A stretch of 64,000 nucleotides of DNA, from the NCBI GenBank assembly GCA_965637545.1, contig OZ281496.1:21762001-21826000 (forward strand), written 5' to 3'. Source of the DNA: Phallusia mammillata (taxonomy: Eukaryota). The position numbers were made by a program, and so were the translations under genes. This document shows positions 52,169 through 63,777 of the stretch, in pieces; the stretch's first letter is position 1, and each line of letters starts with the position of its first letter. The notes under the pieces are model-generated. The model was given only the letters and a program-made list of their open reading frames with translations, did no database searches and had not been told where the DNA came from.

Positions 52169-52907
52169 CAGGGGTGGGGAACCTTTTTGTTTGTGAAGGC
52201 CGCCAAACGGTTTATCGACACTCGTTCAGGCCACACAGACTATTTCTCAGGCCAAGGACAGTGACATTCAAACTTTTTGACTTACAGAATGGTTGATGTG
52301 GGGTCACGTCTAAAACTGCGGGCCCGCTTGGCCCAGCACTTGGCCCAGCACTTGGCCCGTTTTTCCCAGCGAGAGACGGGCTAAGCAAATGGATATAGTG
52401 GGCCCGCAGTTTTTCAATTGCATGAAGTGCTGGGCCAAGCGGGCCAAGTGATCCAAGTGGGCCCGCAGTTTTATACGTGATCGGTTGATGTGCTACTGGA
52501 CTTACGGTCCAAGCTAAATAAAATTCGTCACTACATTTCTACCCTCTCCACAACATTCAGGATTTTATTAACATATAAACTCGCTTGTTTATTAATATCA
52601 ATCTAAGAGCATCTTGTGACATCACAGACGAGTTTAAGACATTCGATTGTGCGCAAACAATTGTTCGTTTGCAGCAGAAGTAAGATTGTAGAAACTTGGT
52701 CTCTTGGCAGTTCTACGGATATCGCTTTGTGTACCAGTACGCAAACATTTGGCTCTAAACCGCTGCGCTTAAACCAATCAAATCGTAATGTGGAATAAAG
52801 GTAAAAAAATACGTTTCTGTCTAGTTTTTAGCGCATGGTGCAGTGTGTATTATCAACATCGTTAATTGTATTCTGACATCGTTTAGGCCGCAGGTTCCCC
52901 ACCCCTG
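52169..52907. mobile_element. hAT MITE hosting a nested TIR element
   Basis: Perfect TIR CAGGGGTGGGGAACC / GGTTCCCCACCCCTG. Perfect TSD GTCTAAAA. Confidence 0.92.
52301..52482. mobile_element. Mutator-like MITE nested in the hAT MITE
   Basis: About 30-bp TIR (G)GGTCACGTCTAAAACTGCGGGCCCGCTTGG / CCAAGTGGGCCCGCAGTTTTATACGTGATC. Flanking duplication GGTTGATGTG. Internal CTTGGCCCAGCA repeats. Confidence 0.8.
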
Positions 52908-53396: not shown

Positions 53397-56300
53397 TTAA
53401 ATGATTAAACAAAACATAAGACAGACGCCCCAAATGACTTGAAATGCATGGTGAACGCGCAGTCCACTTATTGCGCCACAGGTATAACTCCCAACGTAGT
53501 TAATGCATTTATCATTTGGACATGGATCAGGCGTTTGTTCGCATTCATTGACATCTGGAAAATATGTGGTGAAATATTACTCAGTTATTCTAAATTGGAT
53601 AACACATACGCTGTAAAAGTTTGAAAATAAAACTAAAATGTAAAATCTCGACTTACCATCCGGTGCAGTGAAGTTTAAACCTGTAACTGCAAAAACAACG
53701 AGCTACGGTTATTTACGTTGCAGATTAATTAGTATTATTGATTGATTGATTTATGACCCATGAAATAAATCAGTTCCAAACGATGTGACAAATATTAACA
53801 TTTGGTATATTCTACTTCGTTTACCCGTTTCAATCCAAGAGTACACTTGTGTCATTTGTGTGTAAAATGTTGGCCCATTATCACATCTGTCGTCACTAAA
53901 ACTGTTCACACCATATTGGTACCATGTCCCGTCGCCAACATCGCACATCAGTGGTCCGCCCCAATCTCCCTGAAATAATATTGTTATTTTGTTATCAGTT
54001 TTAGTATGGGAAAACTATAAATTCACGCATCGTCCCAAACAATGGTTTTAACATGCTTAGTTTTCCCTTTAGTTGGAATTTACGGACCAAATATGACTGT
54101 GACCCATTTTACCCATTGCGGAATAAAAGAGTGAAAGCCTGGAAACATTAAACATAAAAGTAGTTATTACCGCACAAGTATCTTTGTTGTCTGCATGGGC
54201 ACACAGAAGGGTGCTGGGGAGCCCATCAGGCGACGCACCGCGAAATCTTCTGTAGTTTGGATCACAGTATGTCCTGGTTTGTATCTGCATTTCTACTTCT
54301 TGTAACGTCTCAGAAGGACGAAATGTATGGTCTAAAGCAGTGTGGTCCAACTTTATTTTGTTGCGGGCCATTTAAAATCGTTAACTTACTACGCGGGCCA
54401 AGGTTTAAATTTTTGCAGGAAAAAACTTTTTCTGGGCCAACTCTAGGGTAACTATACACCTTTTTTACCTACAGATAAGTTTATTTTTATACTTTGTAGT
54501 TATTTACTTAGCAGAAGCTGTCAAAAATATTCAGTTTCCACTCTAGCGCAGAAATGCCCCTGAACGGTTTGGAGAAGCAGAACCCTTTATTACATAACAA
54601 TGCCGTGTCATGCGTCACAATAGGAGATTTTATAGCATTTAGTGTGCGTTAATCCTGATATATTGAAAACATTGAATTACTGAAGACAAAACTTATAGTT
54701 GTCATTAAAATGTTGGGACTTTCGCGGGCCAACAAAATTATCTCGCGGGCCACAATTGGCCCGCGGGCCTGCAGTTGGACCACGCTGGTCTAAAGGAAAA
54801 TCAGGATTTTTTTTGCAAACTGCAATACTTCATACCTTAAAAAGATCCACTCAGTTTATTGTTTGGTCATAGTTAGGCCTGCCCAAGTCAAAACGGTAGG
54901 TTAGCGACAGGAAAATTCTTTGGCGCGGGACGGATGCTATTGTTGCTATAACATTTATATTAAGTAATCGTGAAATAGAAGATATCGTGGACAACGGCAA
55001 AAATAACTAATCAATCAAAATTTCGTGTATAAATATTGAAATTAAAGTCTGTAAAATGAAGTTGAGTGAAAAATGCAGATCCGTGAAATGACAATACTTC
55101 TTTGTCACACATCCACAATGGATCACGCCAGACACTCACCTATTTTGTACAAAACTATACAATAAACCTTCGACTGATTTCGCTAATAATAACAGCAATA
55201 AAAAGTGTCATTTCGAACACAAGACGTCCTAAAGTTGTAAGTCGGACCGGGCTTTGCGGGCCGGTTTCGGTTTCGGTTTCGGGCTTGGGTTTCTTAAAAA
55301 ATGCGGGCTTGATTCGGGCCTAACTTTACACTTGGTGTCAACATTTTTTAAATATCTTTAACTAGCTCAGTAGCCAGTTGATGGGCCTGACCTAATTTTG
55401 AACAGCCCTTAAACGCCTTGTTTAAGACCAATTGTCTGTTGTGTTGGTTGTCTTAGTTTTTCTGAGGCTTTAATTTAAACGCCTGTCAATCAAACTTTCG
55501 GACCTAAAAGGGCTTCCACAAAACCATGCGGGATCGGGCCGGGTTTCGGGCTTGTACTTTCGGGTTCGGGCTGTGTTCTGGCTCCAGTTTCAGGCCCGTT
55601 TACAACTCTACGATTTAAAATCGTTCCGCGGGAAGCATTATCTTATTCAGGCCTGCTTAAATAAAACCATCAATGATCGAAGACCAAAGTTCATGAAAAC
55701 CTATAAGTTTTATACACATATCATATCTTAAAATCCTAAGGACGAATGACCCTATTGTTGTTCACGACTAACTTATAAATGTATTATCGTAAGGTGTAAA
55801 CAAACAAATCAAAAATTTACTCCTAAAATCATACCATGTGTTCTTCCCCAACCCGCAAAGAAACATTTTGTGTTTGGAGGCAATTCGTAATTCGTTCCAG
55901 GTGGTAAACAGATGGGTCTCACATCATCATTAAACACAATTCTTGACGACACTTCTAAAAGCGCTGCGTCGTTTCCTGACTGATAATTTCTGAAAAAGTA
56001 AGTATCTTAATATTTTCACTACACAAACTATATGTGTCCATGTTTGAATATTTACGTACATAAAACTTGGGTGTTTGACCTTTCTTCTCACTGGTAACCT
56101 TTGTTCTCCTGGCGCATTTTCAGAAAGCGTCAGTGTTCCAGCGTAGATCACCAACCTAAGTTAAGGTCCATATTACTTTGTTTGTTTTGTTGTGTTGTCT
56201 TATGTTTACTCACGTTTCAGAGTCACTGAAACAGTCGGCTCCCGTCATGACCCATTTTGCAGACAAAATACTTCCTCCACATAAAAATTCATGGAATAGG

Positions 56301-56903
56301 ACATTGTTTTTAAACACTTGCACCATCCAGGGCCAAGAGCCGCTTGTTGAAGTTGACCCGCCGTGTATTCTTGCGCTCTGGAACATTCAAAAACGTAAAA
56401 GTTTAAAAATGTCTGACAAGTATAGTGAGTATGCAAAAGGTTTACCGTTCTGAACGAGCTGGACCGTTTACCACAGACTGGTGCTGGAGTCTCTGCAAAC
56501 CCAACGCGTTGGTTTGTTGATTATGTGACATACACTCTTGCAAATTTGTGTACATATTAATTGTCTATGTGTAAAAGTAAATATACCTGTGCATGTTGGA
56601 ATTGGACTGTCCCAACTGGCATCGGTTTCGTTTGCTACGCATGTTGCAGTTGGTATTCCATTAAGAGTGTAACCGCTTTTGCAGGAAAAATCTACTACTT
56701 CTGCATTGTTATATACGGCGGAGTCTGGAACCACATTGCCATTCAAAATATCTGGTCTGGAACAAGTAGGAACTGCAAGACAAAATTTACATATTTTAGT
56801 TTTCTAATAGTTAACGTACCAACAGCAATGGCAACGTACCAACAGGTGTTGTTAACACCAGTACCACATTGAGAATGAGAAAGTAACTTTTAGCGTACTT
56901 CAT
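53397..56903 (-). CDS. Secreted or GPI-anchored serine-protease homolog: signal peptide - CCP/Sushi - inactive trypsin domain - truncated cbEGF - hydrophobic tail
   Basis: Exons 56903-56840, 56772-56587, 56492-56446, 56377-56214, 56155-56060, 55989-55835, 54331-54171, 53969-53825, 53687-53657 and 53554-53397 join in phase. Motifs CGKR, RIHGG, SWPWMV, CGGSILSAKWVMTGADC, NDAALL, PICLP, GWG, DTCAGDWGGPLMC, DVNEC..CINYVGSYTC. Confidence 0.88.
54338..54787. mobile_element. hAT MITE inserted on the 3' splice site of protease exon 7
   Basis: TIR CAGTGTGGTCCAACT / AGTTGGACCACGCTG. Perfect TSD GTCTAAAG (minus strand CTTTAG|AC) at 54330 and 54788. Confidence 0.92.
55230..55610. repeat. Dispersed TIR-type repeat (TAGAGTTGTAA family)
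   Basis: TAAAGTTGTAAGTCGG ... GGCCCGTTTACAACTCTA. Homologous to 26033-26310. No TSD seen. Confidence 0.75.
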
Positions 56904-58681: not shown

Positions 58682-61600
58682 ATGTCGTTGTTTAAGCACT
58701 TTGGTAGCACAGAATCTCCAACCACGTCCTCTACAAATGAGCTTAATGCTGCTAAGCGCCAAAAAACAGCACCAAAAAGACGAAAATGGAATGACGATTT
58801 CATAAATTATGGATTTCGTCGCCCAATCGGTGAAGAGGAGAGTTCTTTTTCTTCTGCCCAGTGCCTTTTTTGCTCAACCGTATGCATATTTCCAAAATGT
58901 TTCCGAATTCGAACCACAGGGCTTTTTAAGCCAATCACAAAGGCGGGTTTTCCCGGGTCATGTGACTTTTTAACAAATCAGCGTAGTCGACTCATTGAAC
59001 CAATCAGAAGACAGCTTGCGTAGTAACCAGTCAATCTGCCTTGAGTTACTATATTTGAAAGTTAAGGTTGCAACGCACATGTGCGTGGTTTTATAATTGT
59101 ATTACTAAAATAAAAGCATTTTAAAAGGCATTTTTAATAATTAATCACAAGCTTTTTTATAAATAATTATCGGATATTGTTAAGTGGATTCCATGCAGCA
59201 AATTGCGGAACTTGAAGGCATGCAGCAAATTGTGAAACTTGAAGGAAAATTAGTAACAAAAGGAAATGAAGAAATGGTTTTTAGATTGACCTCACAATCA
59301 GCAAAAGACTGGGACGAGTGGCTTGAGTCTTTTTGTGTAGTTTCTAGTACTAGCTGGAATGTATGCCAAACATTTTTCAACCCTAAAGTATTTTGGGGAA
59401 ACCTTTAAATGCCATCTTAATCAGTTTTGCCAACATAAAATTGGTGCATCAAATTCAACACTTTGTGTCCTGTGTCTATGGATGTTAAAATCAAACTTTA
59501 CACCAAGTCAACTAAACATCAGATAAGTTGGTTTCTACTCATCCGTGTATGCCAGTTAACGACAATCACTTGCTTAAAGCTGCCGGAAACCTTGGTTAGC
59601 TAAAGATCAGTGAATCTACAAAAAATTTTTGGCAATGATTGTTAGTGTCTCAAGCATTAAAAAGTTCAAACCCATGAGACCAAGTTGCTTGTTACAGATG
59701 GAATAAGTGCAGCAGTCACTAACAACTGCCATAATCCAAAACCCTGCTCTATGTACTATCTCTGGGATCAGTGGCGTAAATATAACTTTGGGGCATCAAG
59801 TGGTATAAATTTGTTTTGTGCTATACAGAAGTATGCCGATAAATCTGAGGCTAGGATCTGCCTTTAGCAGTTTAAAGGATTTTATGTTCGTGCCATTGTA
59901 AGTCCGATCATGGAAAGAATCGACAAAATGATGTTACAATCTTCTGAGATGGTGTTTGTGGCTTCTACAACCAATCTGGACCGGACTAATGCCTCACTTA
60001 CAGTCCTGTTATGTGGTAGTCCAATTGGGGATGTATCAGGGATCAGCACCTCAGAAGCATATGTATGTAGTAGTTGCTTTTGGTCAGTAGCAGGCACCAT
60101 CTGTGGAATTCATTAGTGATTTGGCCACCACACATCTACACAAGATCATGGTGGCTGTTCAAATGCCATGGAAATCAATCCACCCACTTCATTGTCTGAT
60201 GGCATTGCGGGACCCTCATAAACATAAACCAGTGACTGAATGTCCAGACTACACTGCAGAGAACTTTTCTTAAATTTGATAGCGTTCTGAGCTTACAAGC
60301 ACTCTAGTGACTTTCATTAAAAGAAAACTAATGAAGCAGTAGAAAGGTTTAAGAACTTTATCTCTTCTGCTCATTTTGTTGCACAAATAAGATCAGCACT
60401 TCATTCATTTGGAAGAAACTCAATTGGCAACCGCAATGCTTAATAGCAAAATACATTGTATTTCTGGTATTGACATTAAAATGATATATTTTCTTGGTAT
60501 GGTTGGTACAAAAATTCATTTCCTTTTGTGTTTTACTCTTTTCCTGCAGCTTTTCCGTGTATTTTTGTGTTATTACCTATTTGCTATTCCAGAACCTGCA
60601 TTATACCAATAGATTATCATTGGATCTACTTTATAGAACTGTTGACTGATTATTTTTGACTGTGGTTACTGCATGAATAATAAACAAACTTTTGGATGAC
60701 TGTTGAAATGAGTGATATAGTGTTTTAATTTAGGTACAACTGTTTTGTTCCAAAAAAGAGTTGCAATTAAATAAACTAATGTAAACCATGAAGGAAAATA
60801 AATAGCCTGTGTAGCAAGGTCAAGACAAACTAATTTAACTTGCTGACAAATATGACTGGTAATATAGAGTGCTGTCAATACTACCCAAGCTTGCTTACCC
60901 TAATTTAGAGTATTGTAAGTAAAATGGTGTTTTGTATTATACATGTGATTATAAATGAATAAAAAAAACTGGTGTAAACAAGAAAAATAAAATATCTGAG
61001 AAAAAGCTGCTCACATCAGGTGAGATAAGAAAATAAATTTCTGACACTGCTGCATAGTTTTAGATGGCAGCTATTCTGTACAACATTTTTTGGGACTATT
61101 ATCATTTCAATGTCACAAGAAAAACAATAAATTTGCTAGCACAAGTAAATCTTCTCATAACTTACTTTATACTGTAGTAGTTTTTCTTAATCCTGCATTT
61201 GTTCTCAAGCACACTACTTCAATTTGCTATTTAAAATCGCTTCTGTTTTATTGTAAACTTACGACAGAATTCCAGCATGCACAATCAAAATAACATATAC
61301 ATTGGTGGCACAGAACAACATTCAAAACTGAAAATACGGGGAGTAATTGGAACAACTATGCAAATGGCATGCCTAGTGTACACTTATGTTAGAACTGCAC
61401 TGTGTACAATTATAAACCATTCATCTCCGTAGGTTAGGAACAGTTTGTTGATCCCAAGGTATGGCATGCTATGCATGTGTTAAATTGCGTTGATCATAGG
61501 TGCTTGCACTAGAGACAATGAGGCATAATACACTGTTTTTATGCCATGCAAACTTTCCTGCATGCAGTGCTCATCATATACAAAGTAAAATTTTGACATT

Positions 61601-63777
61601 GATGGATTGAAGGGGTTGCGTTGCTATCCTAAACAAACACATAGCATTAATAATAGAAAATATTTTGCACAAAAGCTATTTCAGACTTAATAAAAAGTAT
61701 CAGTGTATAATCTAACATTAATGGAGCATATATTGCACAAAAGTGATTTTACACCCAATAAAAATTATGTGTGTATAATTTACTGCTATACTTAACCTAA
61801 TAAACATTACCTTCAGTTTAAACATCCAAAATGCATCAGTCTTTACTATGTTCCGACTTGTAAAAATGTTTTTTTCATTCAAAACTGACATAAAACTTGC
61901 AACGTCGACAATACTGAAGTCAAAGTAACCGCTTAGCAACCTGGACGTGACGTATCGACAACCCGCAGATTTCCGCTGCTGTGATTGGCTGAAAAAGCCC
62001 TGTGGTTCGAATTCGGAAACATTTTGGAAATATGCCAACCGTATATGGCAATGTTAATCTTGTCTAATCAAAGCTTTTAGGTCATCTTACAAAACAGCAT
62101 CCAGAACACCAAAACAAGTCAAATAAATTCTTCCAGTTACAATTGGCTGCCCAGAACAAGCAGAGCAGTTTGTTTGGTAAGCAAATGGGACACCAGGTAA
62201 TCGATGACAAAAACCTCATATTAGCCTCGTTAAAAATGTCACATCACATAATGAAAGTCAAACGTCCGTATATTGAACTTGAACGTGTAGTTCAGCCTTG
62301 TTTGGAAATTGCGGCTGATTATATTCATGGAGGAAAAAGGGCAATTGATAAAGTCAAACAACTTCCAATTTCCGACACTACTGTTGGGCGACGCTGTGTC
62401 GTTATAGCCAAAGATTTAAAAGAGCAACTAATCCAGAAGCTACTAAAAGCCTCCTCTTTCGGCATACAGTTGGATGAAAGTACTGATGTAAGTAGTGAGT
62501 CTCAGCTAATGGTTTTCTGTAGGTTTCCTGATGTAGAAGTAAACAGAATAGTCGAACACTATCTTTTTTGTCAACCAGTTGGAGAAACAGCAACTGCTGA
62601 AGCGATTTTCAACAAAATAAACAAATTCTTTGAAAACGAGAAGTTAGATTGGTCAAAGTGTAAGGCTGTGACAACAGATGGCGCTGCAGCTATGCGAGGT
62701 TCACAAAAGGGCGTGATTAAAAGAATACAACGTCTGTCTCCAAAGTGCGTAGGAATTCATTGCATTCTTCATCGCGAAGCATTAGTAACAAAGAAAATGA
62801 AACTGAATGCAGGCATGATAGATGTCTGTGAACATGAATTAAACGATGTTCTGCGGGCAGTTGTAGACATTGTAAACGCAATTCGAAAAAGTGCTAAGCA
62901 ACACAGATTGTTTTCAAAACTTTGTGATGAAATGACATCCTCTTCCAAAAAACTGATTATGCACTCGGAGGTACGGTGGCTATCCAGGGGGAAAGTTCTT
63001 TCCCGTGTGTTCGAACTTCGTAAACCATTAACAGAGTATTACACTCAACATAAAGACGAAAGAGCTATAAAGTTCCTTGACATATTCTGGGTTGCAAAAT
63101 TGGCGTACTTGGCATCGATTTTTGATCGTTTCAACCAAGTCAACATCTCTCTTCAAGGTAAAGGGGGTGATATATTTCGCTCTACGAGCAAGATCAATGC
63201 ACTGAAACTAAAAATTCCACTCTGGAAAAATAATGCTCAATCAAGAAACTTCAATGACTTCCCTTTATTAAGCCAATATATGAAAGAGTGTGGTTGGGAG
63301 TTTGAGGATGTTTCTATTGAAGATAAACTGGCTGTCCTTATTGTTGGTCTCTTGAACTTACTTGGCGATAATTTGGCCGCGTACTTTCCTGACGACAACG
63401 ACCAATATCTGGAAACCAACTCGTGGATTATTCAGCCATTTAATGATGAGCTTACAGTGGACGAGGAATTGCTGGAACTCCGCGCTGATTTAAACCAAAA
63501 GTACTTATTTCGAGGAGTGGATTACTCAGAATTCTGGGTATCTCTTTTACAATATCCTGAATACGAAAATATTGCAAAAAAGGCCATTGATATTTTGGTA
63601 CAGATGCCTACCACTTATTTATGCGAAGAAGGATTTTCCAGTCTTGTCGAGATAAAGTCAAACAAACGAAACTCGATACTTGACATTGATTCTTTAATGA
63701 GGGGGGCTATTGAGAACGTGTTAACACCACGTTATGTCCAAATTGCAGAAACAATGCAGCAGCAAGCTAGCCATTGA
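58682..63777 (+). pseudogene. hAT transposase (BED finger + DDE), interrupted in the BED finger by a Mutator-like element and a TAA at 62065
   Basis: 58682-58883 encodes M..KRRKWNDDFINYGF..CLFCSTV. The frame resumes after the insertion as YGNVNLV*SKLLGHLTKQHPEH. From 62068 it is open to 63777 with QLDESTD, TTDGAAAM, HCILHREAL, EVRWLSRGK and TTYLCEEGFS. Confidence 0.9.
58884..62035 (+). mobile_element. Mutator-like (MULE) element, 3152 bp, with decayed transposase
   Basis: 56-bp TIR (1 mismatch) GCATATTTCCAAAATGTTTCCGAATTCGAACCACAGGGCTTTTT.AGCCAATCACA. Perfect 9-bp TSD CAACCGTAT. Internal fragments such as EMVFVASTTNLDRTNASLTVLLCGSPIG resemble the animal MULE DDE core (from memory, not searched). 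Confidence 0.9.

What the first reader, a model, noticed from the sequence alone, without database searches (positions are those of the whole stretch)
54330..54795. hAT MITE inserted exactly on a splice acceptor, with the TSD regenerating the AG
The 8-bp TSD reads CTTTAG|AC on the gene strand and spans the intron-exon junction. The original pyrimidine tract (TCCTGATTTTCCTTTAG) is now 458 bp upstream; using it reads into the MITE and meets TAA after about 37 codons. The second TSD copy restores the exact coding junction but has only GGACCACACTGCTTTAG as tract. The element therefore either hides in the intron through a TSD-derived acceptor, the principle behind introner-type intron creation, or creates a productive/NMD switch. 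The local hAT target preference (nTCTARRn) contains TAG, so this could recur genome-wide.
Basis: partly seen in the sequence, partly recalled or inferred. Interest (0 to 1): 0.7.

Follow-up and report, generated by a model that had tools for sequence, protein, structure and literature searches.

The report
Jumping element duplicating a splice acceptor
A small jumping element has landed exactly on an intron-exon boundary of a sea-squirt gene and duplicated the splice signal, so the gene can still be read correctly on paper, but the available RNA data show only its neighbouring twin gene, so whether the trick works is untested.

Summary
The DNA observation is confirmed. A 450-bp MITE (54338-54787) of a family with about 100-200 copies sits between two perfect copies of the 8-bp duplication CTTTAGAC (gene strand). 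That duplication spans the acceptor of intron 6 (AG|AC) of a 10-exon, catalytically dead CCP-trypsin-EGF gene on the minus strand. A tandem paralog 30 kb away has the same intron, 195 nt long and without the element, ending acttttag|ACCATAC. It serves as a paralogous empty site.

The family has 8-bp duplications, CAG-type terminal repeats and an nnYTARnn target, which is the Buster-type hAT signature.

- **Upstream acceptor:** using it gives Asp plus 36 codons, then TAA.
- **Downstream acceptor:** using it keeps the 401-codon frame.

The functional reading is unresolved. Spliced RNA contigs in two runs come from the paralog, not from this copy. The downstream acceptor is no weaker in pyrimidines than RNA-verified acceptors of the paralog. 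The upstream acceptor is fully intact from the donor to +4.

One DNA run's contig stops exactly at the element boundary, which hints that the insertion is polymorphic.

The principle, a duplication that supplies the 3' AG, is known from introners and maize Ds. Here no new intron arises. This scan has noted similar acceptor hits elsewhere in this genome; I did not test them. Interest is modest.

The parts
54338..54787 (-). 450-bp non-autonomous hAT-type (Buster-type target) MITE
   Evidence: Terminal inverted repeats. Family of at least 98-203 copies. No ORF above 49 aa lies wholly inside it. It differs by 3.1% from the sample consensus.
54774..54787 (-). Terminal inverted repeat at the upstream end on the gene strand, CAGCGTGGTCCAAC
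54338..54351 (+). Other terminal inverted repeat, CAGTGTGGTCCAAC as read on the + strand
54788..54795 (-). Upstream (distal) copy of the 8-bp duplication CTTTAGAC. It holds the original acceptor AG (54791-54790) with its native intron context.
   Evidence: The site is identical to the downstream site from -6 to +4. Pyrimidines at -23..-4 are 12/20.
54330..54337 (-). Downstream (proximal) copy of CTTTAGAC. Its AG (54333-54332) is the only acceptor that keeps the reading frame.
   Evidence: Pyrimidines at -23..-4 are 10/20. The paralog's homologous junction is confirmed by RNA contigs.
54171..54331 (-). Exon 7 (161 nt, phase 1) of the trypsin-like domain
   Evidence: The exon is 86% identical to the paralog's exon, with dN/dS 0.20.
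55835..55989 (-). Exon 6, whose donor (GT at 55834-55833) must pair with one of the two acceptors
   Evidence: (Pfam trypsin profile positions 95-130).
54796..55834 (-). Pre-insertion body of intron 6 (with the upstream duplication copy's six intron bases it made a 1045-nt intron). It is already expanded by a very high-copy repeat at about 55215-55700.
   Evidence: In DNA run X5 the contig depth reaches 26,606 there against about 50 in the flanks. The paralog's intron is 195 nt.
54677..54679 (-). TAA reached in frame if the upstream acceptor is used (Asp + 36 codons)
53397..56903 (-). Host gene: signal peptide, Sushi/CCP, dead trypsin fold (His to Asp, Ser to Trp), EGF, hydrophobic tail. It has 10 exons and 1206 nt of coding sequence.

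Best explanation
**Shown**
- A Buster-type hAT MITE transposed into the target CTTTAGAC, which straddled the 3' splice site of intron 6 (ctttag|AC) of one of two tandem copies of a catalytically dead CCP-trypsin-EGF gene.
- Repair of the staggered cut duplicated the 8 bp. The pre-mRNA now carries two acceptors 458 nt apart that are identical from -6 to +4.
- The upstream acceptor keeps the whole native intron context. The downstream one is preceded by the element's end and alone preserves the frame.
- The insertion is later than the gene duplication. It is absent from the paralog, its duplication is perfect, and it differs by about 3% from the family consensus, against dS 0.21 between the paralogs.

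**Inferred**
- The insertion is probably still a presence/absence polymorphism.
- When the gene is transcribed, both acceptors are competent.
- The downstream acceptor yields normal mRNA. It is favoured by exon definition, because it lies 161 nt from the next donor whereas the upstream one lies 619 nt away. Its pyrimidine content is ordinary for this gene family.
- The upstream acceptor yields an element-containing, stop-bearing mRNA that would be expected to go to nonsense-mediated decay.
- The net effect would be a tolerated hypomorphic allele, buffered by the expressed paralog.
- It lengthens an existing intron and does not create one.
For: - **Structure and family:**
- **Target:** nnYTARnn, which matches the Buster-family consensus nnnTAnnn cited in PMC3517528.
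- **Paralogous empty site:** a 195-nt intron at the same position.
- **Host gene still intact:** 10 exons in frame; dN/dS 0.36 against the paralog.
- **Downstream acceptor strength:** within the range of functional acceptors of this gene pair. Two of those acceptors are verified by spliced contigs of the paralog.
- **Stop after 37 codons** via the upstream acceptor.
- **Hint of polymorphism:** in DNA run X5 a 395-nt contig at full depth (55) ends exactly at 54337. With 31-letter words, an element present on both haplotypes should let the contig run up to 30 nt into the element. A stop at the boundary needs a variant at 54338, as an empty allele would give (inference).
- **Terminal stem:** the repeats are predicted to pair in RNA and bring the two duplication copies together (z = -2.2).
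Against: - No transcript of this gene copy was seen in three RNA-like runs. The spliced contigs present carry exactly the paralog's differences: 18 of 150 positions in exon 7.
- The upstream acceptor is untouched from the donor down to +4 and is transcribed first. It could take all the splicing, which would make this a plain knockout.
- An AAG lies 19 nt upstream of the downstream acceptor. The only yTnAy branch candidate for that acceptor is at -50.
- The joint that would prove an empty allele was not among the 15 of 44 joints listed.
- Contigs cannot show rare isoforms.
Confidence: 0.45

Rival explanations
1. Simple loss-of-function insertion allele. The intact upstream acceptor is used essentially always, the element is exonised, the message hits TAA and is degraded. 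The regenerated downstream acceptor is a coincidence of no consequence, and the allele is tolerated because the tandem paralog is expressed.
For: - The upstream site is identical to the pre-insertion acceptor from the donor to +4. It has the better tract: 12/20 pyrimidines and a 9-nt pyrimidine run.
- No transcript of this copy was seen, while the paralog's is assembled in two runs.
- An earlier follow-up in this scan on another MITE in this genome found an ordinary presence/absence knockout (s1-394857, not tested here).
Against: - Using the upstream acceptor would make a 619-nt internal exon, against 30-186 nt for the other internal exons.
- The downstream acceptor is as pyrimidine-rich as verified acceptors of the family.
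- The missing contigs may simply reflect tissue or stage.
Confidence: 0.3
2. The host copy is transcriptionally silent or already on its way to being a pseudogene. The position of the element relative to the acceptor then has no functional meaning.
For: - No contig of this copy's exons at 99% identity or better in runs X10, X13 or X15.
- The exon 7 peptide has no near relative among 1.84 billion representatives, so no annotated product was found.
Against: - All 10 exons are open with GT-AG borders, and dN/dS against the paralog is 0.36.
- The insertion is too young for decay to show.
- Only three small RNA-like assemblies were laid.
Confidence: 0.15
3. The element is fully neutralised. Only the downstream acceptor is used, and the MITE simply becomes the 3' end of a longer intron with no loss of output.
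For: - The acceptor core ctttag is rebuilt by the duplication, and the pyrimidine content is ordinary.
- Exon definition favours the site nearest the next donor (general knowledge of exon definition; not tested here).
Against: Nothing inactivates the upstream acceptor. The predicted terminal stem pairs both duplication copies alike.
Confidence: 0.1

Closest known systems
Introner elements (for example Micromonas pusilla IE1, Chrysochromulina families)
   Same: These are short DNA transposons with terminal repeats and a target-site duplication in which the 3' AG of the spliced intron is co-opted from the duplication (PMC11282704; PMC9860276).
   Different: - Introners insert into exons and create new introns, supplying the other splice site themselves. 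Here the donor is the old one, the intron pre-exists (paralog), and the element only lengthens it.
- Splicing is not shown here.
- No enrichment of this family at exon borders was seen.
Maize Ds/Ds1 (hAT) elements spliced from host messages (adh1-Fm335, wx alleles, sh2-m1 'de novo intron')
   Same: A non-autonomous hAT element with an 8-bp duplication in a gene, whose harm depends on which splice sites are used around it. The references are listed in PMC3260210; the details are from my own knowledge.
   Different: Those cases are insertions into exons and have RNA evidence. This one sits on an existing acceptor and has no RNA evidence. The Giroux 1994 paper itself was not held.
Mar, a Buster-family hAT MITE of Drosophila willistoni
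   Same: A MITE with CAG-type terminal repeats, 8-bp duplications and the target nnnTAnnn (PMC3517528).
   Different: A different host and no sequence relation was tested. For Mar a relic autonomous copy is known; none was found here.
MITE-derived non-canonical introns of the tunicate Fritillaria borealis
   Same: A tunicate lineage in which MITE insertions with terminal repeats and duplications at intron borders are removed by the spliceosome (summarised in PMC11282704).
   Different: Those are new introns with non-canonical AG-AC/AG-AT ends. All nine introns of this gene are GT-AG.

Membership tests
hAT superfamily non-autonomous element (MITE) | 8-bp target-site duplication | tested here: met
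   This copy has a perfect CTTTAGAC duplication. Of 43 full-length copies, 35 have perfect 8-bp duplications.
hAT superfamily non-autonomous element (MITE) | Short terminal inverted repeats starting with YAG | tested here: met
   CAGCGTGGTCCAAC and CAGTGTGGTCCAAC: 14 nt with one C/T difference. The arms extend to 20 nt at 85%.
hAT superfamily non-autonomous element (MITE) | Small, non-coding, multi-copy | tested here: met
   The element is 450 bp with no ORF above 49 aa wholly inside it. The terminus has 98 hits against 0 for the control, and there are 203 BLAST candidates.
hAT superfamily non-autonomous element (MITE) | Autonomous partner encoding a hAT transposase with the same termini | tested here: inconclusive
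   The genome has at least 522 candidates for the hAT dimerisation domain, including six identical 660-aa ORFs. None of the 30 fetched loci carries this terminus. Longer loci that share the terminus are truncated or interrupted copies.
Buster family of hAT | Target consensus nnnTAnnn (as opposed to nTnnnnAn of the Ac family) | tested here: met
   TA at positions 4-5 in 30 of 33 other distinct duplications; YTAR in 25 of 33. The consensus is as cited in PMC3517528.
Introner | Insertion creates a new spliceosomal intron in previously continuous coding sequence | tested here: not met
   The paralog has an intron at the identical position and phase without the element, and RNA contigs confirm that junction.
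Introner | A splice site supplied by the target-site duplication | tested here: inconclusive
   At the sequence level, the only frame-preserving AG lies in the downstream duplication copy. Its use in RNA could not be observed.
Introner | Family members recurrently coincide with intron boundaries in genes | tested here: not met
   In 41 other independent full-length copies, 51 flanks with an AG in the duplication were tested. The 8 longest open flanks have no Pfam hit. The test is weak, because exon 7 itself gives no Pfam hit.

The most novel reading that the evidence does not exclude
In this ascidian, 3' splice-site recognition may rest mainly on a short (T)TTYAG core with little polypyrimidine tract. 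Buster-type hAT MITEs, whose YTAR target matches YTAG acceptors, could then land on acceptors and be neutralised automatically, because the 8-bp duplication rebuilds the core. That would be a general and repeatable route by which introns grow at their 3' end, and a natural stepping stone towards introner-like behaviour in a chordate relative.
Probability: 0.12. Interest if true: 0.6.

Novelty: new member of a known kind. Interest (0 to 1): 0.3.

Why it matters
If carriers of this allele splice correctly, it is a clean natural experiment. It offers two acceptors 458 nt apart that are identical from -6 to +4. One keeps its native branch and tract region; the other has only transposon sequence upstream. 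That would show how little upstream context an ascidian acceptor needs. It would also show that hAT insertions on YTAG acceptors repair themselves through their own duplication.

A rough expectation can be set. YTAR occupies 2.1% of positions in the window. Four of the 16 acceptors in this gene pair are YTAG|. With an assumed 100,000-130,000 introns (my assumption, not measured), about 0.6% of unselected insertions should hit an acceptor in this register. That is about one per 100-200-copy family, which is what is seen here. Whether the genome-wide count falls below that figure would measure how harmful such hits are.

If instead the upstream site wins, this is an ordinary knockout allele buffered by a paralog.

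Tried and rejected
1. **RNA evidence.** One lay of three RNA-like runs and one DNA run gave spliced contigs that seemed at first to support the junction. Their mismatch counts (18/150, 5/120, 3/124, 8/129) equal the paralog's differences. They therefore say nothing about this copy. The reads tools were then exhausted.

2. **Protein word search.** I searched with the stop-free 100-aa frame over exon 7, scoring residues 14-67. No candidate came back. The length window (55-175 aa) excludes full-length products.

3. **Exhaustive search with the exon 7 peptide**. It gave only three weak hits (best 33% identity) with several matched stretches each, so no annotated or transcript-derived product could be retrieved.

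4. **Empty allele or haplotig in the assembly.** The flank searches found only this locus and the paralog.

5. **Autonomous partner.** Not found.

7. **Chance direct repeat.** Rejected, because the family shows the same 8-bp duplications.

8. **Assembly artefact.** Rejected, because an independent DNA run's contig breaks at the element boundary and does not read through an empty site.

9. **Giroux 1994.** The paper could not be read.

Full report
**1. The observation**

On the minus strand the region reads ...tcctgattttcCTTTAGAC|CAGCGTGGTCCAAC ... GTTGGACCACACTG|CTTTAGAC|catacatttcg.
- The element occupies 54338-54787 (450 bp).
- Its 14-nt termini differ at one C/T position. The pattern gives 3 hits in the window against 0.46 expected; the two exact ones are these termini.
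- The repeat finder extends the arms to 20 nt at 85% complementarity. It reports a 10-bp exact direct repeat 458 bp apart. Eight of those bases are the target-site duplication. The other two are a coincidence: the element begins with CA and the exon continues with CA.
- The two acceptor sites are therefore identical from -6 to +4.

**2. It is a real transposon family**

- A search of the window's own 240-Mb assembly gave 203 first-look candidates. Forty were scored, at 88-100% identity over the full length.
- The 30-nt terminus occurs 98 times with at most 2 mismatches, against 0 for the reversed control.
- Of 43 full-length copies I could fetch, 35 have perfect 8-bp duplications.
- Among 33 other distinct duplications, positions 4-5 are TA in 30, YTAR holds in 25, and TAG is centred on one strand or the other in 20.
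- Eight-bp duplications, CAG-type termini and an nnnTAnnn target are the signature of the Buster family of hAT, as described for the Drosophila MITE Mar (PMC3517528).
- The genome holds at least 522 candidates for the hAT dimerisation domain, including six identical 660-aa ORFs. I found no autonomous copy with these termini.
- This copy differs from the sample consensus by 3.1% and from its nearest copies by 1.6%.

**3. The host gene and the junction**

- A 10-exon, all GT-AG model on the minus strand (56903-53397, 1206 nt) is open in one frame.
- Pfam finds Sushi in exon 2. It finds trypsin profile positions 1-46, 95-130 and 178-220 in exons 4, 6 and 8. Exon 7 must therefore supply the missing 131-177.
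- Exon 6 ends ...ACACATG|gt at 55835 (phase 1). Only the AG at 54333-54332 continues the frame (G|AC CAT ACA = D H T).
- The upstream AG (54791-54790) gives Asp, 36 element-encoded codons, and then TAA at 54679-54677.
- The protease is dead. WVMTGADCF aligns to factor XI WILTAAHCF (His to Asp). GDWGGPL aligns to tryptase GDSGGPL (Ser to Trp).

**4. A paralogous empty site**

- About 30 kb away (C3:21845556-21847738) lies a tandem paralog with the same ten exons and the same two dead residues.
- Its intron 6 is 195 nt and ends ggttacttttag|ACCATACC.
- The intron and its TTTAG|ACCATAC junction therefore predate the insertion. The MITE did not create an intron.
- Between the paralogs dS is 0.21, dN is 0.078 and dN/dS is 0.36, and both frames are intact. 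The insertion is several-fold younger than the duplication, too young for decay of the host gene to be visible.
- Intron 6 of this copy had already been expanded by a very high-copy repeat at about 55215-55700 (depth up to 26,606 in a DNA run).

**5. RNA and DNA runs**

No listed holder of this stretch is on record as RNA. I laid three RNA-like runs from three studies and one DNA run from a fourth.

*RNA-like runs*
- Runs X13 and X10 each hold a spliced contig covering exons 6-7-8 (and 9-10 in X13).
- Their mismatch counts are 18 of 150 in exon 7, 5 of 120 in exon 6, 3 of 124 in exon 8 and 8 of 129 in exon 10. These equal the paralog's differences from this copy.
- The 12 unaligned letters between the exon 6 and exon 7 pieces correspond to the paralog's first 12 exon bases, which carry 4 mismatches.
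- So the paralog is expressed and is spliced at the homologous junction. This copy was not seen in any of the three runs.
- RNA contigs that enter the element all leave it into foreign flanks, so they come from other copies.
- Contigs drop rare forms, so this is not proof of silence.

*DNA run X5*
- A 395-nt contig at full depth (55) covers 53943-54337 and ends exactly at the last base before the element.
- With 31-letter words, a homozygous insertion should let the unique flank run up to 30 nt into the element. A stop at the boundary needs a variant at 54338, which an empty allele would give.
- A heterozygous 1-nt indel at 54807 shows that the individual carries two haplotypes here.
- The proving joint (54337>54796) was not among the 15 of 44 joints listed. 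I treat polymorphism as likely (about 0.6), not shown.

**6. Which acceptor?**

- Pyrimidines at -23..-4 are 10/20 for the downstream site and 12/20 for the upstream one.
- Sixteen acceptors of the two paralogs range from 6 to 14. The paralog's exon 7 (10/20) and exon 8 (8/20) acceptors are used in the RNA contigs. The downstream site is therefore not unusually weak for this family.
- *Favouring the downstream site:* the alternative exon would be 619 nt, while the other internal exons are 30-186 nt. By the exon-definition model, the acceptor nearest the next donor is preferred (general knowledge).
- *Favouring the upstream site:* its entire native context is intact and it is transcribed first.
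- *Branch signals:* the only yTnAy candidates within 70 nt are at -50 (downstream site, with an AAG at -21/-20 in between) and at -12 (upstream site). Branch signals therefore decide nothing.
- *RNA fold:* the predicted fold pairs the terminal repeats and, weakly, the two duplication copies with each other (z = -2.2). This treats both AGs alike.
- I conclude that mixed use is the single most likely outcome, with low confidence.

**7. Recurrence**

- YTAR occupies 2.1% of window positions. Four of the 16 acceptors in this gene pair are YTAG|.
- With an assumed 100,000-130,000 introns (my assumption), about 0.6% of unselected insertions would fall on an acceptor in this register. That is about one per family of this size, which is what is seen.
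- In 41 other independent full-length copies I tested 51 flanks with an AG inside the duplication. The eight longest open flanks have no Pfam hit. The test is weak, since exon 7 itself has no Pfam hit.
- Earlier notes of this scan list other MITEs on acceptors in the same genome (s1-408698, s1-353711, s1-380908, s1-361554). One follow-up (s1-361554) names the genome as the sea squirt Phallusia mammillata. I tested none of these.

**8. Comparison with what is known**

- A duplication that supplies the 3' AG is the introner principle (PMC11282704; PMC9860276).
- hAT elements spliced from host messages are classical in maize. The references are listed in PMC3260210, and the details are from my own knowledge.
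- This case differs in that it sits on an existing acceptor, so it extends an intron. It fails the defining introner feature of creating one.
- It is a new instance of a known kind, not a new mechanism.

**9. Limits**

Noticed in passing
window 56214-56377 (exon 4) and 53825-53969 (exon 8); paralog L037: Both tandem paralogs carry His57 to Asp and Ser195 to Trp in the trypsin fold, and exon 8 is identical at the protein level between them. This is a conserved dead protease homologue, not a decaying gene.
   Followed up: partly
window about 55215-55700: The same intron holds a very high-copy repeat rich in GCCCGAA-type units. Contig depth in DNA run X5 reaches 26,606 there against about 50 in the flanks. 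It accounts for much of the growth of this intron from about 195 nt to 1045 nt before the MITE arrived.
   Followed up: no
window 52169-52907: A second hAT-type MITE of another family lies just downstream of the gene. Its termini are CAGGGGTGGGGAAC and its duplication is GTCTAAAA on the + strand. A nested palindromic GGGCCCGC-rich element sits inside it at 52304-52480.
   Followed up: partly
window 58877-58946 and 61973-62042: Inverted repeats of 70 nt at 90% complementarity lie about 3 kb apart. They overlap short ORFs that mirror each other, and neither ORF has a Pfam hit. This may be a larger element with long terminal repeats.
   Followed up: partly
G000 loci L038-L043 (six chromosomes): Six copies of a hAT element have identical dimerisation-domain matches (same E-value and score) and 660-aa open frames, which suggests a recently active autonomous hAT. 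It was not shown to share this MITE's termini.
   Followed up: partly
L015/L016 (C4:26.33 and 26.49 Mb); L085/L097 (C6:4.138 and 4.148 Mb): These pairs of MITE copies have the same identity to the query and the same duplications, so they are segmental duplicates and not independent insertions.
   Followed up: no
window 54171-54331 (exon 7 peptide): The 53-aa exon 7 peptide has only three weak matches (best E 1e-7, 33% identity) among 1.84 billion representative proteins, so this part of the trypsin fold is lineage-specific.
   Followed up: no
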